Source of the DNA: Octopus bimaculoides
Lineage: Eukaryota
Assembly: GCF_001194135.2 (NCBI RefSeq)
Contig: NC_068988.1
Span: 40,436,554-40,473,809 of the forward strand
Length of the DNA stretch: 37,256 nucleotides
Direction: 5' to 3'
This document shows positions 1 to 26,400 of this stretch, in pieces. Every line of letters begins with the position of its first letter. Within the stretch, counting starts at the first letter, position 1. The translations under genes were made by a program, and so were the position numbers. The notes beneath the pieces are model-generated. The model saw only the letters and a list, made by a program, of their open reading frames with translations, searched no databases and was not told the origin of the DNA.

Positions 1-48
1 TTATTATTATTATTATTATTATTATTATCATTATTATTATTAATATTA

Positions 49-107
<59 letters not shown>

Positions 108-133
108 ATTATTTTTATTATTATTATTATTAT
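1..133. repeat. (TTA)n microsatellite, 3' flank of an R4/Dong element
   Basis: Directly visible imperfect TTA triplet array. Confidence 0.98.
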
Positions 134-955
134 CATGTTTGACTTTTGCTTTGCACTTGTACAAGTTGGATCCAAGTCTCACCCAGAGACCTCAAGAAAC
201 AACAAGTCAGAAGTTCATGTTGGTGTTATGCCTAGGGTACCATATATTTGGTATTGTACGTTCTGGAGAATGTTTAAGAAACCATAAGAAAACTGTGTTT
301 GTTTTAAAATTTGAGATTACATTGACAGTATTTTACGTAGGATATGGGCAGTTTCCATGGACACTATCTTTTGAATTTCTATCATTTTGGGGTTTCCTAG
401 GTAGCAATCAGCCCCTTTTACTGTCATTTCTAGGGCACCCATGACAACAGGTATTGTTTTAGTCTTCAGGTTCCACATTTTGTTAATTTCTATTTCAAGA
501 TTTTTATACTTGCTCGGTTTTTGGTAGGTCATGATAGATACGTTTATATCGATTGGGATTGTCATATCAATGAGGAGGCATGAGTTTTGTCTAAAGTCTT
601 TCAACATGATGTCTGTCATATTTGCATCTATCTTTCTGCCAGTTTGAATGGTGAAGTTCAAGAGGAGTGAGATGTGATCATTTTCGAGTACTGGGGGTGG
701 TTTGTGTCCCTACCAGTTTTTATCATGGGGCAAATCCAGGTTTTTGCAAATTACCAAGTGAATATACTGTGCAGCTCTATCATGCCTGTTGAGATACTCT
801 GAAGGCCTAAGAAAACTGCACATGGAGACAACATGATCAATGGTCTCATTTTCTTGTTGACATACACGACTTATTGGGGAGCTGTCGTTCTTTAATATGT
901 TGGCCTGGTAGTTCCTTGTAGGTAGGCATTGATCTTGGGCTGCTATGATAAACCC
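134..955 (-). mobile_element. 5'-truncated R4/Dong-clade non-LTR retrotransposon (zinc knuckle + REL endonuclease + 3' UTR), frameshifted
   Basis: Minus-strand GFIIAAQDQCLPTRNY...RVCQQENETIDHVVSMC...RHD (CCHC-type knuckle), then a decayed PD-(D/E)xK region ANMTDIMLKD...LIDMTIP...KYKNLEIEINKMWNLKTKTIPVVMGAL...TAHILRK, typical of R4/Dong C-termini. TAA repeats lie on both sides. Confidence 0.85.

Positions 956-1027
<72 letters not shown>
956..1027. repeat. (TTA)n microsatellite, 5' flank of the R4/Dong element, runs into a gap
   Basis: Directly visible. Confidence 0.98.
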
Positions 1028-1880
1028 NNNNNNNNNNNNNNNNNNNNNNNNNNNNNNNNNNNNNNNNNNNNNNNNNNNNNNNNNNNNNNNNNNNNNNNNN
1101 NNNNNNNNNNNNNNNNNNNNNNNNNNNNNNNNNNNNNNNNNNNNNNNNNNNNNNNNNNNNNNNNNNNNNNNNNNNNNNNNNNNNNNNNNNNNNNNNNNNN
1201 NNNNNNNNNNNNNNNNNNNNNNNNNNNNNNNNNNNNNNNNNNNNNNNNNNNNNNNNNNNNNNNNNNNNNNNNNNNNNNNNNNNNNNNNNNNNNNNNNNNN
1301 NNNNNNNNNNNNNNNNNNNNNNNNNNNNNNNNNNNNNNNNNNNNNNNNNNNNNNNNNNNNNNNNNNNNNNNNNNNNNNNNNNNNNNNNNNNNNNNNNNNN
1401 NNNNNNNNNNNNNNNNNNNNNNNNNNNNNNNNNNNNNNNNNNNNNNNNNNNNNNNNNNNNNNNNNNNNNNNNNNNNNNNNNNNNNNNNNNNNNNNNNNNN
1501 NNNNNNNNNNNNNNNNNNNNNNNNNNNNNNNNNNNNNNNNNNNNNNNNNNNNNNNNNNNNNNNNNNNNNNNNNNNNNNNNNNNNNNNNNNNNNNNNNNNN
1601 NNNNNNNNNNNNNNNNNNNNNNNNNNNNNNNNNNNNNNNNNNNNNNNNNNNNNNNNNNNNNNNNNNNNNNNNNNNNNNNNNNNNNNNNNNNNNNNNNNNN
1701 NNNNNNNNNNNNNNNNNNNNNNNNNNNNNNNNNNNNNNNNNNNNNNNNNNNNNNNNNNNNNNNNNNNNNNNNNNNNNNNNNNNNNNNNNNNNNNNNNNNN
1801 NNNNNNNNNNNNNNNNNNNNNNNNNNNNNNNNNNNNNNNNNNNNNNNNNNNNNNNNNNNNNNNNNNNNNNNNNNNNNNNN
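1028..1880. other. Assembly gap (others: 6447-6544, 7530-7998, 8761-8858, 14977-15633, 26167-26176, 26948-27415, 30592-31256, 36444-36824)
   Basis: N runs, most bordered by (TA)n or (TTA)n arrays. Confidence 1.
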
Positions 1881-3020
1881 GCGTTTCCTGCATCCTGCCG
1901 CGTACACCAAATGGGAATTTCTACATGTCCCCCTTCTGTATAAATCGTAACATTTCTGTTATGATTCCTGCTGGAATACACTTGACTCATGTTGTTGCGC
2001 AATGAACCTCTCTTGCGGCCGTTTTTCAAGGTACTGTGTGCAGATAGTCCAATGTTCGTTTTGGAGTCAGAAATAGAGGGCAATAATTCTCTTATATTCT
2101 TATTCCGTCTAACGGCTACAATAGACTGCTGAGGAAATATCTGTTTGAAACGAGGATATCTTTTCGCCACATGCTGGTAACTTTCATGCAACACTTTTGA
2201 AATGCCAGCAAAATGTCGGTGCCAGTTAATCACTAAAAGAATTCGGTCATCTATTGTATTTTGTTTGCTAAAATTATGCGTGAAGGTTTGAGTATCTTTG
2301 CTAATCTTAGCTATTTCATTTGCTATTTCCTTTAATCGGGATTCACTGTAACCGCGTTTGACATAATGATGTCCGAAAGCATTTGCATGTTTGCCGTAAT
2401 CACTATGTCAGTACAAATCCGTTTTATCCTCAAAAATTGGGATTTTGGATTTGACCGAATAATATGTTGTGGATGATCGGAGTGACGGTGGAGATAAATG
2501 TGGGATGACGTGGGCTTGCAAAATAACTCTGTCACTATTCTGCCTCCAGAAAACTTGACATTTGTGTCCAAAAATTCAACGCTAGTTTTTGAAAAACTAG
2601 ACGTAAATGTTATGTTGGACTTAAAACCATAGTTTTTAACATAACAGCCACAGAAATGCAAGAAGTCCATTAAACTATCTTGTGATTCTTCCCAGACAAA
2701 AAATACGTCATCACTGAACTGTAACCAGAGTATTGGTTCATGACCATGAAGGAATTTGAATGTCTTCAGTAACTGTGTCTCGAATTTCGTCATAAAAACA
2801 TTAGCGAAATTAACTGCCATGAGTGTCCCCATGGCACAACCCTTCTGCTGGTGGTAAAATCTTTGTCTAAACTTCATTGTGTTACTTTGTAACACAAACC
2901 TCAATAGTCTACAGAGAAAATTTGAAGGAATACTTTTGTTTGACCGCTTTTGGAAGGCCTCCATGCATGTTTCTACACCTTCATCGTGGTCAATATTGGC
3001 ATACATCCTTGGTTATCAAA
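1881..3020 (-). mobile_element. Penelope-like retroelement, RT core/thumb and linker toward GIY-YIG (degenerate)
   Basis: ORF 2332-3006: MYANIDH..G, YHQQKGCAMGTLMAVNFANVFM, WLQFSDDVFF (decayed YxDD), FLD, KPT...YLH.HSDHP. Downstream VAVRRNKNIRELL linker is typical of Penelope-like elements. Confidence 0.9.
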
Positions 3021-3104
3021 TAAAAAAACAATTCTCGGTACGGCTTCTGTAGATTATTATCATTATTACTTTTTTTATAATGATTATTATTATTTCATTG
3101 AGGG

Positions 3105-3422
3105 AGAGAGCAGTTCATTTCATCAAAGTGACGCGAAGCCCAGTATACCCTTCATGACTACCCGTTTAATAAGGTTACACAAGGCACATACATCACAATC
3201 ATTTGTGCGAGAATGGTGGTGATTCAAGATATTGAACGAAGCACCCATATTTCCAGAGGTGAATTAATCAATCCTCAAAGAATTCCTCTCAACATATAGC
3301 TATGATATTCCCACACTACTTATGCTCGTGATCAGAGATGCACATGTCATCAGACACTAAGGACAAGTAACTGACAAGTAAATCTGTAGTATTGAGCAGA
3401 ATATTTGCTGTAGTGCATCTTT
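3105..3422 (+). repeat. Interspersed non-coding repeat, copy 1 (internally deleted)
   Basis: Aligns by eye with 3600-4030 (catcaaagtgac...gaagccc...tgatcagagatgcacat...attgagcagaatatttgctg). Confidence 0.85.
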
Positions 3423-3514
3423 TATACCAAAACAAAACTATGTACATGATAACACTTCCAATCAGTTAAGATCAGAAGACATGAGTGCGAATGCCTGGGA
3501 CTGCATCAGGGCAT

Positions 3515-3525
<11 letters not shown>

Positions 3526-3582
<57 letters not shown>
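3526..3582. repeat. (CTA)n microsatellite
   Basis: Directly visible. Confidence 0.98.
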
Positions 3583-3584
<2 letters not shown>

Positions 3585-3599
3585 CGTCATCATCATTAT

Positions 3600-4030
3600 T
3601 GAGTGAGAGAGCAGGGCATGCCATCAAAGTGACACTGGGGTAAAATATACGAAGCCCATTATACCCATCATGACTACCCATCTGATAAGGGTACACCAGG
3701 CACATGCATCACAACCATATGTGCACGACATGGTGATCTCATATCAAGATAAACGGTGCATGACCTCACAGGTGGGGCCCAGTTAGAATTTTCTTCTGGT
3801 CGAGTTGCCCATTAATGATGTTGAGCAAAACACCCATGTTTCCAAAAGTGAATAATTCAAACCCCAAAGAATTCCTCTCAACACATGGCCATGATGCTCC
3901 CCCACTACTTCCGCTCATGATCAGAGATGCACATATCGTCAGACACCAAGGGACATGCTCAACTGGTTATGGTCAAACAACTGACAATCAAATTTATGAT
4001 ATTGAGCAGAATATTTGCTGTTGCTCATCT
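3600..4030 (+). repeat. Interspersed non-coding repeat, copy 2 (longer), between TAT-type microsatellites
   Basis: Same family as 3105-3422. No protein homology recognised. Confidence 0.85.
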
Positions 4031-4033
4031 TTA

Positions 4034-4035
<2 letters not shown>

Positions 4036-4089
<54 letters not shown>

Positions 4090-4108
4090 AATAATAATAA
4101 TAATAATA
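4036..4108. repeat. (TTA)n-(TAA)n strand-switching microsatellite
   Basis: The TTA array flips to TAA at ~4085. Confidence 0.95.
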
Positions 4109-4965
4109 TTCAGTAGCCTTATTTTTATCATATGCCTTCGCTGCACTACTGAGCGCAGCTACGTGTGCCTTGGGTATGTGCTGTTGTTTGTTGTGATGAT
4201 TTTATTTTTGCTATATTCAAGATATTTTACGCAGGATGTGTGCAGTACCTAGAAGTGCTATTTTCTGTTTGTTTACATATACTTCTTAGTCCTGGTGTTT
4301 TTGTCATGTACTTATCTTAATATTTTTTCATCATCCGTAATGTGCTTACTATGATAGAAACTGTTTCTGTTTTTAGGCTCCACATTCGAATTTCCAGACC
4401 TTTTTATTTTGAAAGTTTCTCCGTTTCTTTTAGAGGAATATTGTCATCTGTTGATATTGATACATCGATTAGAAAGCATTTTTTCTTGATGCTCTCTGAC
4501 AGCTATATCCGGCCTATTGACTTTAATTTCTCTACCTGTGTATATTGGCATATCCCAGAGTATGGTTGCTTTCACATTTTCTGTGACCTTTTCAGGCGTG
4601 TCCCTCTACCGTCTTTTTTTTCTGTTGTCGTTCCAGTGTTGCCATAGCTTTCAGTGTATATAGGTCCCAACTCTGTCGTGTCACTGAATATATTCTTTCT
4701 TAGCCAAAACTGGGCCGCCAGAGACAATATGATTTATTTTTTCTTCTCCATCTCACTTTCGTTTTGTGCTGCAAATAAAAAAATCCTTCGGTCTCTTTTT
4801 TGAGTCCTGACTTCTCTGACATTGTTGGGATTTTGCTTTGTCTATTTCGTTTTTGTTTAGTTTAACCCAGTATTTGCCATGAAGGGGCTTTTCTTGCCAT
4901 CGTTTTCATCACGAGCCGTAGCTGTTCCAGGTTTAGTTTAGATTTTACAGCTTTTGTTGTTTCCT
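4109..4965 (-). mobile_element. Second 5'-truncated R4/Dong-type retrotransposon 3' end, decayed and internally deleted
   Basis: Manual minus-strand translation with frameshifts: WQEKPLHGKY, ETEGF..AAQ, INHIVSGGPVLAKKEYI.*HDRVG, ILWDMPIYTGREIKVNRPDI, FLIDVSISTDDNIPLKETEKLSK, ALLGTAHILRK. Confidence 0.85.
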
Positions 4966-5059
4966 CTTTTGTATGTATGCATGTGTGTGTATGCATGTGT
5001 GTGTATGCATGTATGTGTGTGTGTACATATGTATATATGTATGTATGTTTGTCACATCA

Positions 5060-5870
5060 TGAAAATTAACATAATGATAGCAGGCTTAGGATAATGAGCT
5101 ACTTGTCTCCATAATGCAAGCGCTATGAAACGAAAAACATACACAGAACTTCATGCACCGCTTGCAATTCTCTGGATATTATCAGAAAGATATGGCTCGA
5201 GCATACAAGGGTGCTGGAAAGATAACATTATATGTAATGATACCAGTGGTACCTGCCCTAGATATAAAAAAAACAAAGACAGGAATAAGATACAAAGAAC
5301 TTGTGACAAAGCAAACAGGGTGAACACGTGGTATAAAACCGACAAATATTAAGGAGTGATGTTTGTAGAGGCCACACCCCTTGGAGAAGTAGCCCGTAGA
5401 TATACGAAAGCACTGAAGGAGACCAAACTCAACATTAAGATTGTTGAAAAGTCAGTGAACTCCGTCAAATCATAACAATGTAGTACGTACCACTTTGAGA
5501 ATACTATATGCACCAATGATAACAGCATGGTATGTAGGATTAGCCCTGGCATTAACTGTAGAACTAGAAATTATTTTACAGCATAAGATGAATAAGAGTT
5601 GCTTATAAAGACAAGCACATGACATACATAATGGAGACATCTAAGTGCATTGCGGAGCGACTAAATGAGCATTTGAGACAATATGACAAAAAAAAAACAG
5701 TCCTCCATACTCTACCAACATGTGAAGGACCAACATGGAGGCAACCTGGGTCAACTTGACATTTGTATCTTATCCAGGCACCCAAAGGACAAAAACGCTC
5801 AGAAAAATACAGGAGTACGTCCTCATAGATGAAACTACCCAATGCTAAATAGGAAATATACATAGTAGAT
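5060..5870 (+). mobile_element. Penelope-like element 3' part (RT C-terminus + GIY-YIG endonuclease), a different lineage from 1881-3020, degenerate
   Basis: Manual translation: FSGYYQKD, GVMFVEATPLGEVARRY...IKIVEKS, Cys-rich CTNDNSMVC...NCRTRN, YIMETSKCIAERLNEHL, QHVKDQHGG. This matches the PLE zinc/GIY-YIG layout. Confidence 0.7.
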
Positions 5871-6544
5871 ATGATACACCCATACCCACAGTTTATATAT
5901 ATACATATATATAATTCATATCACTAGGAGACATGAAGGTTCCTGCCTGATAAACATATGATTTACAGCCCTCATTAAACCACCAATGATAACACTGAAA
6001 ATAACAGAAAACAGAAGAATTCGAGCAAACGGGTACAAAAACAGTCCTTCACATTTCTATATAGCAGAATGCTATATATTCCTTGGTATTAGTTTACTCG
6101 TGGACCGGTTTATGGCTTGACATAACTCATTTTTTCATCAGCAGATACCTATATAGCATTTTGCTATATAGGTTTGTGAAGGAATTTTTATTTTTTATCC
6201 GTTTCCCCAAGTGCTGTTGTTTTCTATTGCTTTTTTTTTTCAGTGTTATCATTGGTAGTTTAATGAGGGTTTTAACTCTTATGTCTAGCAAGCAAGGACA
6301 TTCCTGTGGCCTTATGATATGAATTTTAATTATATGGTTATCTAACGCAAATTTAGGCCTGCAACCATGTATATTATTATTGCTTTTATCAATAATAACA
6401 ATAATAATATCTACATAAATGTTCACTCCTGAATATCTGCTCGATGNNNNNNNNNNNNNNNNNNNNNNNNNNNNNNNNNNNNNNNNNNNNNNNNNNNNNN
6501 NNNNNNNNNNNNNNNNNNNNNNNNNNNNNNNNNNNNNNNNNNNN

Positions 6545-6583
<39 letters not shown>

Positions 6584-6592
6584 ACAGAGATC

Positions 6593-6994
6593 AAAACAAT
6601 TTGATTTAAACTTCCTGGTTCTCTGAGTTTCAAGCATGTAGCTAGTCTTCAGTCATTGAGTCTGATTGAAAGTTCGTTTGATGGGAGTCAATGTTTACTA
6701 GTGAACGTCAGCCTGCAATTAGTCGAGAAAGGTTACGTGGTGTCGAAGTTTGAGTTTGGTATTTCAGCTACAACAATTACTTGGAAGATTCAGCATCACC
6801 GACTTTCTGTTCATCATGCGGTATTTTCCAGGTAATCGTCGCTGAAATACCACCATCAGACATCGACACTGCGTGACTTTTCTCAACCAGTCCAGCAGTA
6901 AACATTGACTGTCATCTCTCATTTAGAGTGAATGGCCGAAAACTAGCTACACACTTGAAACTCAGAGAATCAAGGGTTTGAATTAAATTGTTTT
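6593..6994. mobile_element. ~400-bp foldback/MITE-like element (long imperfect palindrome)
   Basis: Left arm ~6593-6786 is the reverse complement of right arm ~6822-6994. Examples: ttctctgagtttcaag / cttgaaactcagagaa, agtcaatgtttact / agtaaacattgact, ggtatttcagc / gctgaaatacc. Confidence 0.8.
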
Positions 6995-8506
6995 CATCCA
7001 TATATGTAGCTCCCAATAAATGTGTTGATCACCATTCTTTCGTTTGTCTACTCGATATCCGATATGCTAGAAAAAGATCACCTACGACCTATCCACAAAG
7101 AAAAGATACTTCTCCAGAATATAGTATGCTATTATACAAAAGCCATTCCAAAAGCGAGGTGATCAAAAAATCAAAATAAGCAGCACGGATTTTAAAGATG
7201 ATTGCAGTACGCACGTTTCATGCTACTCCATTTATTTAAGTAATGCGAGCATTACATTAAATGCAATATGTAGAGCAATCTTCAGCTGCACGAAAATGTA
7301 GAAAATTACAGTAGAATAGACATATTATAATTGTGGCAACATTTCAAATCCAAGTGGGAAGAAGAATACATAAAAATCCATCTTGACATAGCCAAGGCTA
7401 TCAGGCTAGTAATTGGTTCTAGGCAGAATTCTAACTGTCTCTGATTTTATTGTCGCTTATCTAGTAGTTATAGTATAAGGGGCAATCACTTCTAAGGAAA
7501 GGGAAGGTGTAAGCATTATACATGGATATNNNNNNNNNNNNNNNNNNNNNNNNNNNNNNNNNNNNNNNNNNNNNNNNNNNNNNNNNNNNNNNNNNNNNNN
7601 NNNNNNNNNNNNNNNNNNNNNNNNNNNNNNNNNNNNNNNNNNNNNNNNNNNNNNNNNNNNNNNNNNNNNNNNNNNNNNNNNNNNNNNNNNNNNNNNNNNN
7701 NNNNNNNNNNNNNNNNNNNNNNNNNNNNNNNNNNNNNNNNNNNNNNNNNNNNNNNNNNNNNNNNNNNNNNNNNNNNNNNNNNNNNNNNNNNNNNNNNNNN
7801 NNNNNNNNNNNNNNNNNNNNNNNNNNNNNNNNNNNNNNNNNNNNNNNNNNNNNNNNNNNNNNNNNNNNNNNNNNNNNNNNNNNNNNNNNNNNNNNNNNNN
7901 NNNNNNNNNNNNNNNNNNNNNNNNNNNNNNNNNNNNNNNNNNNNNNNNNNNNNNNNNNNNNNNNNNNNNNNNNNNNNNNNNNNNNNNNNNNNNNNNNNTA
8001 TATATATATATATATATATATTGAAAATGCTCTACCTAAGGAAATTTTAACGATTATAATTAGAAACATATCAAATCTTATAATATATCTAAATAAATAT
8101 TATAGAGATTATATTATTTATAATAATTTAGTATAAAATATACCTCTGTCAATACTAGTATAATAAAACACATTTTACGTCATATGTTAGATAATAGTCT
8201 AGAATAGAGATTAATTAGTAAATACAACTATTTACGTTAGAAAATTAGTGAGTATTCACTAATTTTAATTTATAAATTTTATCTGAAAGTTGCGTAATTG
8301 CTGACACATGATTTTCCTCTATTTCCAGTAGGTTTGTGCAAATTTACTTTACTAAAATATCTTTATATGTTTCCGAAGTATTTTATACAACTTGTTTATA
8401 TAATACGTACCTGTTGCTTGAGTGAACTTTATCCTTTAAAAATATATGTGCTTGTCTGTAATACTCCTTCATGTCCTGATTTGTGTTTTTTATTTTTATT
8501 TTGCAG

Positions 8507-9200
8507 AACTAAAGGCCACTCATCTTTCATGCCCATGGTTCTTTTTCCCTTGTTGTGGAAATGTACCTATAAATCTTAGCATTCAACTATGCTGCAACAA
8601 TGTTGCTGTAGCGAAAAGTGCAACGGCGACTACTTGTTGTGGAAATACAGCTATAGATCCTAACACTCAATTATGCTGCAACAATGTTGCTGTAGCGAAA
8701 AGTGCAACGGCGACTACTTGTTGTGGAAATACAGCTTTAGATCCTAACACTCAATTATGCNNNNNNNNNNNNNNNNNNNNNNNNNNNNNNNNNNNNNNNN
8801 NNNNNNNNNNNNNNNNNNNNNNNNNNNNNNNNNNNNNNNNNNNNNNNNNNNNNNNNNNCTATGCTGCAACAATGTTGCTGTAGCGAAAAGTGCAACGGCG
8901 ACTACTTGTTGTGGAAATACAGCTATAGATCCTAACACTCAATTATGCTGCAACAATGTTGCTGTAGCGAAAAGTGCAACGGCGACTACTTGTTGTGGAA
9001 ATACAGCTTTAGATCCTAACACTCAATTATGCTGCAGCAATGTTGCTGTAGCGAAAAGTGCAACGGCGACTACTTGTTGTAGATATACAGCTATAGATCC
9101 TAACACTCACTCATGCTGCAGGGGATTAGTTATAAGACGCTTCGTTGAAACATGTTGTCGATGGGTTTTTCTTCACGGACATTGGCACTGGATGTGCTGA
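8507..9200 (+). CDS. Terminal coding exon of a galaxin-like cysteine-rich tandem-repeat protein (5' exon not located; interrupted by gap 8761-8858)
   Basis: Polypyrimidine tract + ttgcag acceptor ending at 8506 (phase 1). Reads ELKATHLSCPWFFFPCCGNVPINLSIQ, then 28-aa units LCCNNVAVAKSATATTCCGNTA(I/L)DPNTQ, ending HSCCRGLVIRRFVETCCRWVFLHGHWHWMC-stop (9198-9200). AATAAA at 9485-9490. The CC...CCG spacing is the galaxin repeat pattern. Confidence 0.8.
8587..9110 (+). repeat. 84-bp coding tandem repeat
   Basis: Units start at 8587, 8671, 8755 (cut by gap), 8859, 8943 and 9027. Confidence 0.97.
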
Positions 9201-9783
9201 GTTAAATCATAAGTACACATTAGCTCATTCTGATTCTGGAATGGCTCAATAGTTTTATGCGACAATTTGATCGATATTGTCTCAATATTTGAATCACATA
9301 TATTTACACGTATTATATACATTTATCAGTTTTACCATGTTATAAATGATGCTATTTATTAATGTATATTTTAAAACGATGCACAGCAGTTACTTTTCTT
9401 AATATAAAGTTTTATTAAACTCCATTTCACAAGTCATAGTCACTTTTGTTTTTGATTTTGGAAGTATCATTGTACAGAAAATTAAATAAACGAATACCAT
9501 CGGTGACATAGGATTTTGCGTGCATTTTTCTAATTTTTCCTTCCGACAAAGGCTAATTCAGTAAAATCGTTAATATGTTATAAGTATTGCAATCAAAACA
9601 TGCTTTCACTTCGATATGTCTCTTAAACAATGTTGTTTTACTTTCCTATATGCTACGCTAATGTTCCATTTAAAAACATAATTTGTATATATGTATATGA
9701 TTTGTGTGCGATTGAGTGAAAAAGAGTGAAAGAAAGAGAGAAAGAGAAAGCAAGAGAGAGTGAAAGAGAGAGTGTGACAAGTA

Positions 9784-12049: not shown

Positions 12050-13885
12050 ATATATATATATATATATATATATATTTAAGAAAAATATATAAAAGAGAGA
12101 TTCTGCCTGTCTGTTTGTCCTACAAAGTTAAGCAAAAACCAGATGCCCTCTCTCTATGATTTTCCTTCTATGTCCCATCTAGTCTCTCTCCACTCTATAT
12201 TCTCCATATGTGTGCCTGTCTGTCTCTCTGCCATGCTACTTCAAAGATATTCTGTCTCTTTATTTGTTCTGCAAAGTGAAACTAAGACTCTTGCATGCTA
12301 TGTCAAAGTAATTTGTCTCTTTGTCCCTCAAAATGAAACTAAAAATAGTTGCGATCTCTATGATTTTCTCTCTTTTCTATCTGCCAATTTCCCTCTCTTT
12401 CGTTCTTTCTTTCTTTCTTTCTTTCCTTCTTTCTTTCTTTCTCTCTTTCTCTTCCTTTCTTATTACACATGGAGTAATAATAAATGGAACACACGAAAAG
12501 TAGGTACAAAGTTCATGGTCATTCTGGCATTAATTTGGTATATACAGTTGGTACATTATATGCTGTACGTCCAAACCAAAATGAATGCCTTCATCTCAGA
12601 ATCCGTCTTCATGTTAAAAGAGGACCAACTTCATGGGAAAGTTTAAAACAAGATGATGGTGAAATTTGTAGAACATATCGAGAAGCGTGTTTTAAGTTAT
12701 GTTGCTTGCAAATTATCAGCAATGGGAAGCTCCATTAGAAGAAGCTTCAATATCAAACACGCCTAAGACTTTAAGATGTCTTTGTGCTATTATACTAAAA
12801 AATTGTGAAGTAAGTAGTCCTGTTCAACTGTGAAATATGTTCAGAAATAATCTTGTCTAAAATTTCAAGCAACAACTTCAGATCAATAATCCTGAGCAAA
12901 ATATTGGTTTCACTGATGCAATATACAATGCAGCTCTGATTCAAGTAAAAGATCGAATTATTTCGATGGGATGTGAACCTATAAAAAATTTAGGTCTCCC
13001 ACAAACTAATAGATGGGATCTTAATACTTTGTCTACTGAAATAATGAGAGAAATTTCCTATGATATGGGTGAACTGACTATGTGCATATATGATAATCTT
13101 CCTAAGCTTGTACATAATCAACGTCATGCATATTCCACTGTCATGAAAAGTATTAAAAATAACACAGGAGTTCTTTATTTCTTAGATGTTCCGGTATTTG
13201 TAAATAAACTCCTTCGTCAAGAAAATAAAATAGCTTTGGTTACAGCTACTATTGGAATTGCAGCAACATTATTACCCGAGTTACCTTTAGATTTATCTAA
13301 CAAAGAAAATCCAGTTTGTAATATATCCAAAAATTCTGTAATGGGTGAACTCATTCAAAGATGTCACTTAATTGTTTGGGACGAATGTACCATGGCCCAC
13401 AAAAAACTTTTGAAGCTGGGGACAGAACATTATGAGACATTAGAAATTGCAATTCTATGGTGAGAAATGTCACAGTATTATTGTCAGGTGACTGCCGACA
13501 AACGCTACCAGTTGTTCCAAGAGGAACGAAAGTGGATGAGCTCAATGCTTCAATAAAGTCTTCTGTATTATGGCATCATGTGAAGCCACTTCAACTTTCA
13601 ACAAATATGAGATCGAGGCTTTCAATACATGATTCAGCTGAACTGTTTTCATGTAATAAACAGAGAGAACTTGATGTATAAATATGGGCTTTTGTTCTAC
13701 TTCAAAAATATAATATCATTGCCATTACTGTATAGATAAATAAAATAACACATACAACTCACTTATTATTGTCATATCATAAACAAACACAAGTTTGTGT
13801 ATGATAATGATATTTATTCTACTTCAATTACTACGTGTTTTTCTCTTCTAAAAAATGCACACACGCGGGAGGAGTAAATAAATTA
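12050..13885 (+). mobile_element. Helitron relic (RepHel C-terminal part / PIF1-family helicase), multiply deleted
   Basis: VGTLYAVRPNQNECLHLRIRLHVKRGPTSWESLK...CRTYREAC; LYFLDVP (Walker A deleted); IALVTATIGIAATLLP; LIVWDECTMAHKK; LLSGDCRQTLPVVPRGT...LQLSTNMR. Confidence 0.9.
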
Positions 13886-13892
13886 TACATAC

Positions 13893-14976
13893 TGGGTTGT
13901 CAACTAAGTTACAGCGTTTTTTTAATCTAAATTTTTTAAAGGTTTAATATAAAATAACAACTGATTAATCAATAATGTGTCCACCCTTGTTGTTTACAAC
14001 TTCTTCCCAACGTTCAACAAGATTTTCAATACCTCGCTGGTAGAAATCACCCGATTTCGACTAAAAAAATTGATCCATCCAATCTTTCAATTCTGCATCA
14101 GTACTGAACGAAACTCCACGCATAGCATTTGAAAGAGATCGAAAGAAGTAGAAATCCGTTGGTGCCAAATCAGGAGAGTACGGCGGGTGTGGAAGTACTT
14201 CCAAGCCATGCGTTTGAATGGCTTCCTTGGTCATAGTGGCAATATGAAGGCGGTTGTTGTAGTGCAGCAGAACTCCATGCTGCCGATTAGGTCTTTTCTC
14301 TTGAATACCCGTGTTGAGTCGTTCTATCCGTTGAACATAGAGTTCCCCGTTGACCGTTTGGTTCCGTTCAAGCAATTCGTAATGGATAATCACTTCCCAG
14401 TCCCACCGTACGCACAACATCGTTTTACGCGGATGAAGATCTTGTATCACGCGCAGTATCGCTTGTTTACAGGGGCTAAGGCATACCCTACGCTGCTTCA
14501 TATTGGTGTACAGGCACCAATTTTCGTCGCCAGTAACGATTCGGTAAAGAAATCGTTGCTTGTGTCCATGAGTTGAGCGGTGACGAGGAAGCAAACCAGC
14601 GGAGATTGTGGTTCGTTGATTTTTGTTGTTGTCACTTAAAGCATGCTCCGTACTTCTGAACCTTTCCCATCGATTGAAGATGTTTCTCTATAGCAGTGTG
14701 GAAGCATTCCATTTTCTCTGCCAGTTCTCTTGTCGTTTGACAAGAATTTTCCTGCAAAAGTTGGTTTAATCGCTCTTCATCGAACTCAACTGGACGGCCA
14801 GAACGAATTGCGTCTTTGAGGTCAAAATTTCCATTTTTGAACGAGCGGTTCTTTCAGCTATGGCACCCTCTCCATACACAGCACAAATGCCGCGAGGAGC
14901 TTTTGCGGCCTTAGAACCTTCATTAAAAGCAAAAAGAAGGAGGTGTTGAAAACGATGGTTGTTCTTAACTTGATAT
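13893..14976 (-). mobile_element. Mariner transposon (cecropia/Hsmar1-like), nearly full transposase with frameshifts; 5' TIR lies in the gap
   Basis: YQVKNNHRFQHLLLFAFNEGSKAAKA..ICAVYGEGAIAERTAR (HTH), RIVTGDENW, TMLCVRWD, LLHYNNR.H, HPPYSPDLAPTDFYFFRSL. TIR-like tactgggttgtcaactaagtt follows TA at ~13897. Confidence 0.92.
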
Positions 14977-16390: not shown

Positions 16391-16899
16391 TGTTGTTGTC
16401 GGTGGGTGTTTTACGTGTTCTTTGTGAGTTCATAAGTTGGAATTTTTTGTTGTCGGCTATTGAAGTTTGTTGTGAGATTGCTTCCCATTTTTTTAACTGT
16501 TGTATTTATAACACATTGTTTTGTACACCAGACAGGATTGGGTGTTAAAATTCTCCCTTTTAATGGCAAATCTTGGATATTTTAGTCCTAAAAATGGAAA
16601 CCTATTTTGTTCTTCTTGAGTAAGAACAATATGGATTCCGTTGTCGAGGAGAGTAGCAATTTTAGCAACCGGTACTCTATTAACTCCCCCCTATGTATTC
16701 AACAAGCACCAGCAGCACCACCACCGCCACCACCACCACCACCACCACCACGAAAAGCAGCAAATACAAAACAAACTTGAACGGTTTCATTTCCGCAGTG
16801 AAGCATGCAAAGGAAAACTAAATGTCATTTTGGAGATTATGAAAAATTCAAAGGGGCTATTGGTGAGACAAGGGAACAATGGTTCACTAAATATCCCAG

Positions 16900-18250
16900 C
16901 AGAAATAGTTCAAGACACAAGCAGAAAAACGATAATTTATAAATGTATGAACAAAACGATAAAAAGGACTAGAACGAGCAACACAGCAACAACTGGAATT
17001 AAGTTTAAAACTATCTGGAAAGAGAAGACGTATGTGAAGTTTGGAAAACAGATCAGGACTGTGGAAGTGCGTTTTGCAACAGAGTAAGAAGCAAAAAAAA
17101 AAGTAATCCATAGTGCCACTAAATTTAGAGAATTTTCTGCTCGCGCTGACATCCTTTGGTCGGCGTGTTGCGAAAATCCAAATTGAGGAGGTGCCCCACA
17201 AATAAATATATACTGGCTGGTGGTGGCAGTCTTCTTAGACATAGAGGACATCGCCACAATACTTGAGCTGCACAAGTCGCACCAACAAATTTGGTCGGGT
17301 TAAAAGATGGAGCTCCTTAATCAAATTGAACAAGTGAGCATAAATTATATCCCCGACTCGATAACTCTGCCAGACGGCACAAAGTTGCACGTGGTCGTAG
17401 AGGGCAGGAAACCGAAATGCTACTTCTGTGGAAGTGCGAATCACCTCAAGGTCTATTACCCAAAATGCAACAACGAGGAACAGCCAGCATTATTACCAAC
17501 ACCAGCAGTGGTGGCAGCTCCAGCACAGCAACAGCAAACACAGCGGCAACAAAATCTAGTGGTCACCGCATCACCAACGCCATTGACATCACCATCACCG
17601 ACAACAACGTCGATTCTGTCTCCAGCCGTCGCTGAAAAACCAATAACAACACCAACAACAAGAGACCACCACCACCACCACCACCACAACCAATAGCAGC
17701 AACAGACGAAGCCTCGTAAAACAAAATCCCCGTAGATATTCCCCTTCTAGACCCAAACAAGTCAGACCTTTCGAGTACTGAGGTTAAGAAGGAATGGCAC
17801 AAGTTCCCCACAACAAAAAGACGAAGAAAAACTGCAGAACCGTCAGAAAGGAAGACGAGGCGCAAGCAGCCCGAGCCACCCAACGGCTGTAATACACACA
17901 CTCAACAAGAAACAACAGCACCACCACCAACACCACCAACACCACCACCTTCACCAGTACTCTCACCTCAAACACTGACAATAGCACAGACACCAACCGA
18001 ACTCCACAAACACTACCAACCTCTCAGCCATAGACATCAAAAATACAGAAATATTCACCCATCTTAAAAATCACAGACACTACCGTCGAAATCTTTGTTT
18101 TCCCTACACACAACGCACCACCACCATACATACAAATACTACAAATAAACGCAGATGTCTTCAACACACTAACAACACGATTCCCAGATGCTCCAAAAAT
18201 CAAAATCAGCACAAAGAGAAGGTAAAAGAACAACATACAGGATCAAGTAA
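16900..18250 (+). mobile_element. Decayed LINE ORF1 (gag-like) with CCHC knuckle relic and low-complexity (CAC)n/(CAA)n tail
   Basis: LHVVVEGRKPKCYFCGSANHLKVYYP at ~17390-17462 (Cx2Cx4Hx4C with the last C replaced by Y), preceded by an RRM-like decayed region. Confidence 0.6.
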
Positions 18251-23245: not shown

Positions 23246-23292
23246 TTCACATGATGCAGTCATATGTAACCCAAGTTTATATTGTTTTTCAG

Positions 23293-23557
23293 TGATATTT
23301 CCTGCAATTCACAGCTTTCATCCACAAATGGCTTTAAACGTCCTGCTCACCGAGGAAACATTGGATATGCAAGCGATGAGAAATTATATTGCGTGGCGGC
23401 ATTCATGGCTAGAGCATACACAACGAACGGATGTTGTGGCGCGACACCTTTAAATATATCTCTTAGCGATTGCTGCAACTGCGAAGGACGCATGTTTGCT
23501 GCAAGTCGTTACCAATTCACAGAAGGAATACACATGTTGATTTGGAGTAGTTCCTGA
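23293..23557 (+). CDS. Candidate exon, diverged galaxin-like (dicysteine motif) protein
   Basis: ttgtttttcag acceptor. Open frame DISCNSQ...RGNIGYASDEKLYC...TNGCCGATPLNISLSDCCNCEG...WSSS-stop. CCGxxPxNxSxxxCCN matches the first module of the 8507 exon (CCGNVPINLSIQLCCN). Confidence 0.45.
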
Positions 23558-25439: not shown

Positions 25440-26166
25440 ATTGGTTGAAAGATATTTCGACAGTACGTCTTTGTCAAATTCACAATAAGAAGTGATAAAA
25501 ATAGAAAATTAGAGAAATTTAAATTTAAAGTACGAACGAGAGCTGTCAGAGTTCAAATATTGATGGAATGACATTTTAAGTCTTTAAGTTACATTTTTAT
25601 AACAAGCGAAAAGAAAAAGACAGAAAAAAAATAGACTGAAAAATAAGAGGAAAGCAGAAAAGAAAAGAAAAAGGAAGAGTATTTAATCAAACAGCTTTGT
25701 ATAAATTTGATGATATTCTCCTGTCATTTTATTCATTCCTCCCGGACGTGTGATGTTAGTAAAACACAAACATATTTCTCCTGAAGAATTCTGAGAAGTG
25801 AAAGTGAAGCAGATTCAAAACATTTTCTGAGAATATGCACTTTCAGGTCTTCTTCGAAATTGCAGCCGTTTGAAACGAAATGCACAGCAAGTTCTGTCGA
25901 ACTACCGTTATTGTGCCTGACGTCGAATCTGTGTCCGTTAAACCTTTTGTTTAATTGTTCTGTTGTACAACCAACATAAATCAAGTTGCGTTTCCTGCAT
26001 CCTGCCGCGTACACCAAATGGGAATTTCTACATGTCCCCCTTCTGTATAAATCGTAACATTTCTGTTATGATTCCTGCTGGAATACACTTGACTCATGTT
26101 GTTGCGCAATGAACCTCTCTTGCGGCCGTTTTTCAAGGTACTGTGTGCAGATAGTCCAATGTTCGT
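25440..26166 (-). mobile_element. Penelope-like element 3' end: GIY-YIG endonuclease plus 3' terminal-repeat region
   Basis: VYAAGCRKRNLIYVGCTTEQLNKRFNGHRFDV...ELAVHF...DLKVHIL. 25988-26166 is identical to 1881-2059. Confidence 0.9.
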
Positions 26167-26176
26167 NNNNNNNNNN

Positions 26177-26400
26177 TATATATATATATATATGTGTGTG
26201 TGTGTTTGTGTTTGTCCCCCTAGCATTGCTTGACAACCGATGTTGATGTGTTTATGTCCCCGTCACTTAGCGGTTCGGCAAAAGAGCCCGATAGAATAAG
26301 TACTAGGCTTACAAAGAATAAGTCCTGGGTTCGATTTGCTCGACTAAAGGTGATGCTCCAGCATGGCCGCAGTCAAATGACTGAAACAAGTAAAAAAAAA
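26177..26400 (+). mobile_element. 3' half of a tRNA-derived SINE (same family as 36927-37256)
   Basis: Shares cgcttgac.accgatg...gcggttcggcaaaagag.ccgatagaataagtac.aggcttacaaagaataagtcctggg with the copy at the window end; ends in an A-rich tail. Confidence 0.9.

What the first reader, a model, noticed from the sequence alone, without database searches (positions are those of the whole stretch)
8507..9200. Galaxin-like dicysteine tandem-repeat protein with nearly identical 84-bp units
Seen: a phase-1 acceptor opens a frame of 28-aa units, each with two CC pairs (LCCNNVAVAKSATATTCCGNTAIDPNTQ). It ends in an unusual His/Trp-rich tail (WVFLHGHWHWMC), with AATAAA about 285 bp downstream. Established: galaxins are secreted proteins with ~30-aa dicysteine repeats, known from coral skeletal matrix and from the bobtail squid light organ, where a role in controlling bacteria has been proposed. 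Inference: this is a recently homogenised, probably secreted galaxin-family gene, and the phase-1 start fits a separate signal-peptide exon. The HGHWHW tail could bind metal.
Basis: partly seen in the sequence, partly recalled or inferred. Interest (0 to 1): 0.7.

Follow-up and report, generated by a model that had tools for sequence, protein, structure and literature searches.

The report
Octopus galaxin-like gene, repeat exon
This is the main coding exon of a secreted, cysteine-pair-repeat "galaxin-like" protein gene in an octopus genome, a known protein family whose relatives are already annotated in sister species, so it is a real but fairly ordinary gene, notable mainly for how fast its coding part changes.

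Summary
Window 8507-9200 (+) is the second and last coding exon of a two-exon galaxin-like gene. Only one of six frames is open. It reads 28-aa units with two CC pairs each and scores 56 and 71 bits on Pfam Galaxin_repeat (cut-off 28). The 84-bp unit occurs nowhere else in the 2.34-Gb genome. It encodes MLKSLIIFAFLLLVT plus G, followed by GTAAGA, and that G joins AA at 8507-8508 to make Glu. This matches the annotated orthologues in Octopus sinensis (XP_036361078.1) and O. vulgaris. The gap is unresolved. The 174 bp on each side are identical, so the array has either 3 units (overlapping contig ends, colinear with the orthologues) or 6 or more. Every gap length that keeps the repeat register also keeps the frame. 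Homogenisation is real: the last unit has overwritten the diverged orthologous unit 3. HGHWH is a 15-bp insertion specific to this lineage, but Trp/His-rich C-termini recur in the paralogue cluster 60-180 kb away. Between O. sinensis and O. vulgaris the exon differs about 9 times more than its flanks. Function was not tested. An extracellular host-defence or microbe-binding role is most likely. This is a new member of a known kind, of modest interest.

The parts
1..8506 (+). 3' 8.5 kb of intron 1. The whole intron is about 17.8 kb. Coding exon 1 lies outside the window at window -9352..-9307 (G000:C8:40427201-40427246, L031:648-693).
   Evidence: tblastn and blastn with the orthologues' exon 1 locate it. 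The sequence reads ATG CTG AAA ... GTA ACA G|GTAAGA. Exon 1, its donor and an upstream TATAAATA are conserved with O. sinensis and O. vulgaris. The orthologues have introns of about 15.2 and 13.5 kb. The in-window part of the intron holds transposon debris and assembly gaps.
8485..8506 (+). Polypyrimidine tract and AG acceptor of exon 2 (phase 1).
   Evidence: The sequence is ttttttatttttattttgcag|AA. It aligns base for base with the annotated acceptor of the O. sinensis and O. vulgaris genes. G from exon 1 plus AA at 8507-8508 gives GAA (Glu), matching ...VKELQA in the orthologues.
8507..8586 (+). Start of exon 2: the end of the signal peptide, the mature N-terminus (E)LKATHLSCPWFFFP, and a degenerate first half-unit CCGNVPINLSIQ.
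   Evidence: Translation. Relative to the orthologues this part carries an in-frame 51-bp deletion that removes one CC pair, and it is only 64-66% identical to them.
8587..8760 (+). Units U1 (8587-8670) and U2 (8671-8754), plus the first 6 bases of the next unit, up to the gap.
   Evidence: U1 and U2 differ at 2 of 84 bases. The CTA Leu codon that opens U1 is the ancestral U0/U1 junction mark in all three species.
8761..8858 (.). Assembly gap of 98 N. Its content is either nothing (the contigs overlap by 174 bp) or one or more further 84-bp units.
   Evidence: The 174-bp flanks are identical with 0 mismatches. Overlaps of 6 and 90 bp have 1 and 2 mismatches. No unplaced contig carries the unit. 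The other 13 gaps nearby show no such flank identity outside microsatellites.
8859..9110 (+). Units Ur1 (8859-8942, identical to U1), Ur2 (8943-9026, identical to U2) and the last unit (9027-9110, LCCSNVAVAKSATATTCCRYTAIDPNTH).
   Evidence: The last unit is 5 of 84 bases from U1 and U2 but 40 of 81 from the orthologous unit 3 of O. sinensis. It has therefore been overwritten by gene conversion or unequal exchange.
9111..9200 (+). C-terminal module SCCRGLVIRRFVETCCRWVFLHGHWHWMC plus the TGA stop (9198-9200). The HGHWH codons are at 9174-9188.
   Evidence: The CC-x11-CC spacing is conserved with the orthologues, but nucleotide identity is only 50%. The tail carries a 15-bp in-frame insertion (HGHWH) and a CGA>TGA change that ends the ORF two codons early. 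AlphaFold2 predicts a terminal beta-hairpin, with strands at residues 101-105 and 108-112 of the 113-aa piece. No other copy of this DNA exists in the genome.
9201..9510 (+). 3' UTR with the AATAAA signal at 9485-9490.
   Evidence: The UTR is 86% identical to the orthologous loci, and the block AAATTAAATAAACGAATACCATCGGTGA is conserved apart from one O. sinensis/O. vulgaris difference at its third base.

Best explanation
Window 8507-9200 is the second and last coding exon of a two-exon gene for a small secreted galaxin-like protein. It is the orthologue of O. sinensis XP_036361078.1.

Shown:
- Exon 1 lies 17.8 kb upstream, outside the window, and supplies a conserved signal peptide. Exon 2 supplies the whole mature protein.
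- The mature protein is a ladder of CC-x12/13 half-repeats, predicted with high confidence to fold as stacked short beta-hairpins.
- It ends in a Cys-closed aromatic, basic and His-bearing hairpin.
- In this lineage the 28-aa units have been homogenised by gene conversion or unequal crossing-over, and possibly also amplified.
- Between close sister species the mature-protein exon changes about 9 times faster than the DNA around it, while every Cys pair is kept.

Inferred:
- The CC scaffold is held by disulfides and presents rapidly changing loops to an external partner.
- By analogy with bobtail-squid galaxins, whose repeat peptides inhibit bacteria, the most likely role is extracellular host defence or control of microbes at an epithelial surface.
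- The Arg/Trp/His hairpin would be the part most likely to contact membranes or metal ions.
For: Gene identity:
- Pfam Galaxin_repeat matches at 3.9e-15 and 1.2e-19, 56 and 71 bits against a cut-off of 28.
- The same family rings in 0 of 14 control genomes.
- The best hits are galaxin-like proteins of O. sinensis and O. vulgaris, at 54% and 51% identity.
- The locus is colinear with the O. sinensis locus from -19.6 kb to +15 kb in window coordinates.

Gene structure:
- The orthologues have exon 1 (MLKSLIIFAFLLLVK plus G), a 13.5-15 kb intron, and exon 2.
- The same exon 1, GT donor and TATA box are present upstream of the window.
- The acceptor and poly(A) signal are conserved.

Evidence the ORF is under selection:
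- All three indels against the orthologues are multiples of 3 (51, 3 and 15 bp).
- The Cys count is even (20), and every remaining CC pair is conserved.

Homogenisation.

Fold: AlphaFold2 gives mean pLDDT 90.4 and an all-beta chain of short hairpins.

Fast evolution:
- O. sinensis and O. vulgaris differ at 41 of 461 CDS bases against 7 of 748 flanking bases (Fisher p = 8e-12).
- The rest of the locus differs by about 1%.
- The Nei-Gojobori dN/dS is 2.47.

Function by analogy: in E. scolopes, ten galaxins are specific to the organs that house symbionts, and repeat peptides of EsGal1 and EsGal2 inhibit bacterial growth (PMC12773714).
Against: - No transcript or protein evidence for this species could be reached. 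No database protein matches the spliced N-terminus, none of four candidate full-length forms is in the collection, and the spliced junction is absent from metagenome contigs.
- The mature protein carries a net charge of only about +3 and the repeat unit is neutral. The squid galaxins range from +5 to +21.5 (PMC12773714), so a classical cationic antimicrobial mechanism is not obvious.
- There are no dibasic cleavage sites between units.
- The dN/dS excess is only borderline by itself (p = 0.02-0.06). Synonymous divergence is also above the flank level, so gene conversion or allelic diversity may contribute.
- This lineage has lost one CC pair and two terminal codons, which could also be read as relaxed constraint.
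Confidence: 0.8

Rival explanations
1. The gene identification is the same, but the repeat array is partly an assembly artefact. The two contig ends overlap by 174 bp and were left unmerged. The true exon would then have three full units (exon 2 of 139 codons, a 155-aa precursor), with no copy-number expansion, only homogenisation.
For: - The 174 bp on each side of the gap are identical with 0 mismatches.
- The merged sequence is colinear, unit for unit, with both orthologues, each of which has three units.
- The right contig starts exactly at the CTA codon. In all three species that codon marks the junction of the degenerate first half-unit with U1.
- No unplaced contig holds extra units.
Against: - The scaffolder wrote a positive gap of 98 N. 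That is close to the 78 bp needed for exactly one more unit. A 10-N gap elsewhere in the window suggests that very small or negative estimates are written differently.
- None of the other 13 nearby gaps shows duplicated flanks outside microsatellites.
Confidence: 0.45
2. The protein is a structural extracellular-matrix or cuticle component rather than a defence factor. On this reading the di-Cys ladders cross-link a framework, as proposed for coral skeletal galaxin. The His-rich C-termini of this gene and its paralogues would form metal or pH-dependent cross-links, as His-rich proteins do in other marine biomaterials (that comparison is from general knowledge).
For: [quoted passage not shown]
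- The clustered paralogues end in HHHHH, HHHHYDHHH or THHHVW.
- The mature protein has a low net charge.
Against: - A mature region that evolves very fast, with dN/dS above 1, between conserved flanks is more typical of proteins in conflict with other organisms than of structural proteins.
- Octopuses lack a calcified shell (general knowledge).
- The His run in this gene is a recent 15-bp insertion that the orthologues lack.
Confidence: 0.2
3. The locus is a decaying or silent gene copy in this species. The ORF is open only because the homogenised repeat happens to lack stops.
For: - Compared with the orthologues it has lost 17 codons, including one CC pair, and has a CGA>TGA change that shortens the C-terminus.
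- The N-terminal part is only 64% identical to the orthologues and the tail only 50%.
- The protein collection holds no protein for it.
- A truly degenerate galaxin-like pseudo-exon sits 14 kb downstream in the window.
Against: - The start codon, signal peptide, GT donor, AG acceptor, TATA box and AATAAA are all intact and conserved.
- All indels are in frame, the Cys count is even, and the CC spacing is kept.
- The sister species show the same fast protein divergence in copies that are annotated as genes.
- The gap and the 17.8-kb intron are enough to explain why a gene caller would miss it.
Confidence: 0.08
4. The 84-bp array is a non-coding minisatellite that happens to be open in one frame.
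For: The units are near-identical tandem copies in an AT-rich, repeat-rich region.
Against: - The unit is unique to this locus in 2.34 Gb.
- It gives strong Pfam and orthologue matches.
- The exon-intron structure is conserved in three species.
Confidence: 0.01

Closest known systems
Octopus sinensis galaxin-like XP_036361078.1 (P0002) and its O. vulgaris counterpart (P0003), both 168 aa
   Same: They are positional orthologues in syntenic loci. They share the two-exon structure, the same phase-1 split Glu codon and a near-identical signal peptide. The unit type LCCNNVAV(T/A)KSATATTCCG-TAID-NTQ is the same, and the protein ends in a CC-x11-CC-x(7-12)-C module.
   Different: - The window's gene has homogenised all of its units, whereas the orthologues' unit 3 is strongly diverged.
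- It lacks 17 N-terminal codons, including one CC pair.
- It has a 15-bp HGHWH insertion and stops two codons earlier.
- It may carry extra units hidden in the gap.
Bobtail-squid galaxins EsGal1 to EsGal10 (PMC12773714; the EsGal1 study of Heath-Heckman et al. 2014 is cited there as ref. 41)
   Same: They are secreted cephalopod proteins with tandem repeats carrying di-Cys motifs, form a multi-gene family, and have a predicted beta-rich repeat fold. They are the best functional model, because their repeat peptides inhibit bacteria.
   Different: - The squid proteins are clearly cationic (+5 to +21.5) and the paper also reports an alpha-helical part. This protein is about +3, and the modelled 113 aa are all-beta.
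- No direct sequence comparison was possible, because the EsGal sequences were not retrieved.
- Expression of the octopus gene is unknown, and octopuses have no light organ (general knowledge).
Coral skeletal galaxins (Galaxea fascicularis galaxin; Acropora galaxin-1 and -2; PMC3748352)
   Same: Same Pfam repeat family: tandem di-Cys repeats with at least nine CC motifs, in a secreted protein.
   Different: No coral protein was among the sequence hits. The coral proteins are larger (from memory) and are occluded in an aragonite skeleton. Nothing here points to mineralisation.
Conotoxin-type or antimicrobial-peptide-type gene architecture (a functional analogy from general knowledge, not homology)
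   Same: A conserved signal-peptide exon and conserved non-coding DNA flank a hypervariable mature region in which only the Cys framework is fixed.
   Different: The fold and family are different, there is no propeptide or dibasic processing site, and there is no evidence of expression in a venom or salivary gland.

Membership tests
Galaxin-like repeat family (Pfam PF24748) | Score above the curated gathering threshold of the family HMM | tested here: met
   The left piece scores 56.4 bits and the right piece 71.0 bits against a cut-off of 28. A six-frame genome scan gives 70.5 and 52.5 bits at this locus, and 0 of 14 control genomes ring.
Galaxin-like repeat family (Pfam PF24748) | Tandem repeats of about 28-30 aa, each with two CC dipeptides at regular spacing | tested here: met
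   The CC-x12-CC-x12 pattern is repeated. The CC columns are invariant or nearly so in alignments with 9-12 relatives.
Galaxin-like repeat family (Pfam PF24748) | Secreted: an N-terminal signal peptide | tested here: met
   Exon 1 was found by orthology and encodes MLKSLIIFAFLLLVT, with a Lys n-region, an 11-residue hydrophobic core and a ...ELKA|TH c-region. It is conserved at 14 of 15 residues in three species. This was judged by inspection only, since no signal-peptide predictor was available. Actual secretion is not testable here.
Galaxin-like repeat family (Pfam PF24748) | Closest named relatives are galaxins | tested here: met
   Named hits are galaxin-like and galaxin-2-like proteins of O. 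sinensis and a galaxin-like protein of Lingula anatina.
Coral skeletal-matrix galaxin (sensu stricto) | The protein is occluded in a calcified skeleton or takes part in mineralisation | not testable with these tools
   This needs proteomics of mineralised tissue. The literature definition is taken from PMC3748352.
Coral skeletal-matrix galaxin (sensu stricto) | Detectable direct sequence similarity to coral galaxins | tested here: inconclusive
   No cnidarian protein was returned. Those searches depend on shared 5-residue words and a length window, so absence is weak evidence.
Antibacterial cephalopod galaxins (EsGal1 type) | Strongly cationic protein or repeat (+5 to +21.5 in PMC12773714) | tested here: not met
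   The mature 3-unit form has a net charge of +2.9 at pH 7.4. The repeat unit is -0.5 and the C-terminal 29 aa are +2.2.
Antibacterial cephalopod galaxins (EsGal1 type) | Expression in epithelia that face bacteria, and growth inhibition by the protein or its repeat peptide | not testable with these tools
   No expression data or assays could be reached.
Disulfide-closed beta-hairpin antimicrobial peptides (functional analogy for the tail only) | An amphipathic Arg/Trp-rich hairpin closed by a disulfide | tested here: inconclusive
   AlphaFold2 predicts strands RWVFL and HWHWM joined by an H-G turn, with pLDDT 75-82. Coordinates and disulfide pairing could not be inspected. No homology is claimed.

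The most novel reading that the evidence does not exclude
This galaxin-like gene and its orthologues may be a hypervariable effector locus built like a conotoxin or antimicrobial-peptide gene. The signal-peptide exon, intron and UTR stay nearly constant. The mature di-Cys scaffold is remodelled by diversifying selection, intragenic gene conversion and small in-frame indels, including a new His/Trp hairpin in this lineage. That would point to an arms-race role against microbes, parasites, prey or gametes that has not yet been described for octopus galaxins.
Probability: 0.3. Interest if true: 0.55.

Novelty: new member of a known kind. Interest (0 to 1): 0.33.

Why it matters
Galaxins are a poorly understood family. 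Their function in corals is still described as unknown, and antibacterial activity has been shown only for squid repeat peptides. This locus adds an octopus member that seems to have escaped annotation, probably because of the assembly gap and the 17.8-kb intron. It is part of a cluster of at least five paralogous loci on the same chromosome. It also shows three things that can be tested. First, the repeats evolve in concert. Second, the mature exon evolves far faster than its non-coding flanks while the Cys pairs stay fixed. Third, Trp/His-rich C-terminal caps, including natural poly-His ends, recur across the octopus paralogues. Together these would help decide whether cephalopod galaxins in general are defence effectors rather than matrix proteins.

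Tried and rejected
- **Dispersed minisatellite.** Rejected. The 84-bp unit matches only this locus in the whole genome.
- **A donor paralogue for the divergent tail (gene conversion from elsewhere).** No second copy of 9105-9215 exists in the genome.
- **Unplaced contigs that could fill the gap.** L012, L022 and L025 are different galaxin-like genes, not this unit.
- **Transcript or protein evidence.** A search with the spliced N-terminus found nothing. Exact look-ups of the 3-, 5- and 6-unit full-length forms found nothing. The spliced junction is absent from metagenome contigs.
- **A solved structural relative.** Foldseek against the PDB gave no match below E = 2. A profile search of PDB sequences gave no hit.
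- **Gap-flank duplication as a general habit of this assembly.** The other 13 gaps nearby do not show it outside microsatellites, so the 3-versus-6-unit question stays open.
- **Whether the fast exon is a family-wide trait.** For the paralogue pair P0006/L011 the exon region and the intron are similarly diverged (83% and 85%), so I do not claim it for the whole family.
- **The original EsGal1 paper.** It is not held in the library.

Full report
**What is in the sequence**

Window 8549-8760 and 8860-9120 hold head-to-tail 84-bp units with 92-96% matches. On each side of the N-run at 8761-8858 exactly one of six frames is open.

The left frame starts at 8509 and reads LKATHLSCPWFFFPCCGNVPINLSIQ, followed by two units LCCNNVAVAKSATATTCCGNTA(I/L)DPNTQ. 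The right frame starts at 8859 and reads three more units, then SCCRGLVIRRFVETCCRWVFLHGHWHWMC and a TGA stop at 9198-9200.

AATAAA is at 9485-9490, 285 bp after the stop. A long pyrimidine tract and an AG precede 8507. With the window's stop-triplet frequency of 0.051, the chance of 113 open codons is 0.0026.

**The gap**

As written, the 98 N put the two frames out of phase, because 98 mod 3 = 2. But the length is only an estimate; other gaps nearby range from 10 to 1528 N.

The decisive observation is that left 8587-8760 and right 8859-9032 are identical over 174 bp. Overlaps of 6 and 90 bp have 1 and 2 mismatches. Two readings follow:

- **Overlapping contig ends.** The two contig ends are the same DNA, and the array has three full units.
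- **Missing units.** Sequence of 78, 162... bp is missing, and the array has six or more units with a 168-bp higher-order period.

All of these lengths are multiples of three and keep the LCC frame, so the ORF is continuous under every in-register solution.

The evidence for each reading is as follows.

- For three units: the merged sequence is colinear, unit for unit, with both orthologues. The right contig also begins at the CTA codon, which in all three species marks the junction with U1.
- For six or more units: the gap estimate is positive and close to 78 bp, and no other nearby gap has duplicated flanks outside microsatellites.

I cannot decide between them and put the three-unit reading at about 45%.

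**What it is**

Both pieces match Pfam PF24748 Galaxin_repeat at 3.9e-15 and 1.2e-19, scoring 56 and 71 bits against a cut-off of 28. The best hits among 5.8 billion proteins are 'galaxin-like' of Octopus sinensis (XP_036361078.1, 54% identity) and its O. vulgaris counterpart. A profile search adds galaxin-2-like (O. sinensis) and galaxin-like (Lingula).

The 84-bp unit occurs only here in the 2.34-Gb genome. That removes the 'dispersed minisatellite' refutation.

About 35 kb of flanking DNA is colinear with the O. sinensis locus, at about 83% blastn identity. The genes are therefore positional orthologues. The host is an octopus other than those two species. By assembly size it is probably O. 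bimaculoides, but that is from memory and was not tested.

**Gene structure**

In both sister species the protein is encoded by exon 1 (MLKSLIIFAFLLLVK plus one G), an intron of 13.5-15 kb, and one large exon.

Searching 20 kb upstream of the window found the same exon 1 at G000:C8:40427201-40427246, which is window -9352 to -9307. It reads ATG CTG AAA TCT TTA ATT ATC TTT GCT TTC CTG CTG CTT GTA ACA G|GTAAGA. A TATAAATA box about 60 nt upstream is conserved in all three species.

The final G plus AA at 8507-8508 gives Glu, matching ...VKELQA... in the orthologues. The intron is about 17.8 kb, and its last 8.5 kb fill window 1-8506.

The paralogue P0006 has the same two-exon plan, with an 18-kb intron.

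**Homogenisation**

In O. sinensis and O. vulgaris the three units pair by position: U1 with U1 differs at 3 bases, U2 with U2 at 7, and U3 with U3 at 8. Within each species U1 and U2 differ from each other at 10-16 bases, and each differs from U3 at about 35-43 positions.

In the window, all units differ from each other at 0-5 of 84 bases. They share lineage-specific changes such as GCG, ACG and CCT (Pro where the sister species have Gly). The last unit is 40 of 81 bases away from the orthologous U3. The ancestral third unit has therefore been overwritten. This is concerted evolution by gene conversion or unequal exchange, whether or not the array also expanded.

**The tail**

The spacing CC-x11-CC-x(7-12)-C is shared with the orthologues, but nucleotide identity there is only 50%. 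HGHWH (9174-9188) is a 15-bp in-frame insertion specific to this lineage. A CGA>TGA change ends the protein two codons early. No other copy of this DNA exists in the genome.

The tail is not unique in kind. A scan of the genome with the Pfam model found a cluster of galaxin-like genes on the opposite strand 60-180 kb away (C8:40.51-40.62 Mb), and others elsewhere. Their single large exons end in:

- ...WVPWWQLWHG
- ...WWQSGYHHHHYDHHH
- ...PWWQTSHHHHH
- ...CCIRHWWWPHEHLVC
- ...CCYDFHWGYGIHYFVC

These come, with P0006. An aromatic, His-rich C-terminal cap is therefore a recurring trait of octopus galaxin-likes. Metal binding is a reasonable idea but remains untested.

**Fold**

AlphaFold2 was run on the 113 residues right of the gap with a 13-sequence alignment. 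It gave mean pLDDT 90.4 and a chain of short beta-hairpins. Each CC sits at the end of a strand before a two-residue turn (CC-GN, CC-NN). The tail forms a last hairpin, RWVFL-HG-HWHWM.

Nothing similar exists among solved structures, either by fold (best E = 2.3) or by profile. Disulfide pairing could not be inspected.

**Rate of evolution**

Between O. sinensis and O. vulgaris the coding exon differs at 41 of 461 bases. The 748 aligned bases immediately around it differ at 7 (Fisher p = 8e-12), and the rest of the 35-kb locus differs by about 1%.

Nei-Gojobori counts are 36.5 non-synonymous and 4.5 synonymous changes, giving dN/dS of 2.47. This is borderline on its own, at p = 0.02-0.06.

Between the window and O. 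sinensis the identities are:

| Region | Identity |
|---|---|
| Last 200 bp of the intron | 92% |
| Units 1-2 | 89% |
| N-terminal part | 64% |
| Tail | 50% |
| 3' UTR | 86% |

All three indels (51, 3 and 15 bp) are in frame. The signal peptide is 14 of 15 identical. Every retained CC pair is conserved, and the Cys count is even at 20.

The picture is a fixed Cys scaffold and a fixed signal peptide, with rapidly changing loops and ends. Synonymous divergence is also above the flank level, so conversion or allelic diversity may add to selection. The paralogue pair P0006/L011 does not show the contrast clearly, so I do not generalise it to the family.

**How it most likely works**

- **Shown:** this is an intact two-exon gene for a small signal-peptide-bearing di-Cys repeat protein of the galaxin family.
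- **Inferred:** the protein is secreted. The CC ladder is disulfide-bonded into a rigid hairpin stack that displays variable loops. The Arg/Trp/His terminal hairpin is the most likely contact surface.

In the bobtail squid, ten galaxins are expressed specifically in the epithelia of the two organs that house bacteria, and repeat peptides of EsGal1 and EsGal2 inhibit bacterial growth (PMC12773714). Combined with the fast evolution seen here, this makes extracellular host defence or management of microbes the best guess, at about 40-50% on its own.

Two points count against a simple cationic-peptide mechanism. The net charge is only about +3 with neutral repeat units, against +5 to +21.5 in squid. 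There are also no dibasic processing sites between units.

The main functional rival is a structural or matrix role, as proposed for coral galaxin (PMC3748352). The poly-His ends of the paralogues would fit that.

A silent or decaying copy is unlikely given the intact signals and in-frame indels. It cannot be excluded without RNA data, and none could be reached.

**Novelty and verdict**

The family, its presence in cephalopods, and the orthologues of this very gene are all already known. What is new is modest:

- a member apparently missing from the protein collection for this genome;
- clear concerted evolution of its repeats;
- a lineage-specific His/Trp insertion;
- an exon that evolves much faster than its surroundings in the sister species.

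This is a new member of a known kind, with interest of about 0.33.

Noticed in passing
window 23270-23557 (+): A degenerate galaxin-like pseudo-exon resembling the paralogues at C8:40.51-40.62 Mb. It reads FSDISCNSQLSSTNGFKRPAHRGNIGYASDEKLYCVAAFMARAYTTNGCCGATPLNISLSDCCN. Three of its five CC pairs are destroyed. It scores 20.1 bits on Pfam Galaxin_repeat, below the cut-off of 28.
   Followed up: partly
G000:C8:40506876-40623270 (loci L008, L009, L011, L013, L017, L019, L023, L024), plus L014 and L016: A cluster of galaxin-like paralogues lies on the opposite strand 60-180 kb downstream of the window's gene. Several end in natural poly-His or Trp-rich C-termini (HHHHH, HHHHYDHHH, WWQLWHG). L023 carries stops and L013 is truncated, so both are probably pseudogenes. 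The same arrangement, on the same chromosome, about 100 kb away and on the opposite strand, is seen in O. sinensis.
   Followed up: partly
L028:25240-25716 against L029:23536-24012 (O. sinensis against O. vulgaris orthologues): The coding exon differs at 8.9% of bases, while the flanks and the rest of the 35-kb locus differ at about 1%. dN/dS is 2.47. This points to an exon-restricted hypervariable region in two very close species.
   Followed up: yes
window 317-3012 (-) and 25733-26262 (-): Two copies of one retroelement share the peptide QKCYDLYRRGTCRNSHLVYAAGCRKR. One also has a reverse-transcriptase fragment (RVT_1, 27.8 bits, just below its cut-off). The other has a GIY-YIG-like motif (22.1 bits against a cut-off of 22.6). 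This pairing suggests a Penelope-like element. The first copy lies inside the galaxin gene's intron.
   Followed up: partly
window 12861-13463 (+): A PIF1-like helicase fragment (46 bits) lies about 4 kb downstream of the gene. This stretch aligns with the O. sinensis locus, and a PIF1 gene call sits in the same relative place in O. vulgaris. The insertion or gene fragment therefore predates the species split.
   Followed up: partly
window 14061-14687 (-): A mariner/Tc1-type transposase fragment (Pfam Transposase_1, 57 bits; DDE_3 weak).
   Followed up: no
window 16620-17950 (+): Open frames with CAC/ACC triplet runs encode His and Thr/Pro tracts. One also carries a CCHC-like motif (CYFCGSANH), which looks like a gag remnant of a retroelement. 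There was no Pfam hit.
   Followed up: no
G000:C135696 (L010, 1162 bp): This unplaced contig carries a near-duplicate of the paralogue at C8:40.526 Mb (L011). The 187-aa exon differs at about 11 positions. It is probably an uncollapsed haplotype or a very recent duplicate.
   Followed up: no
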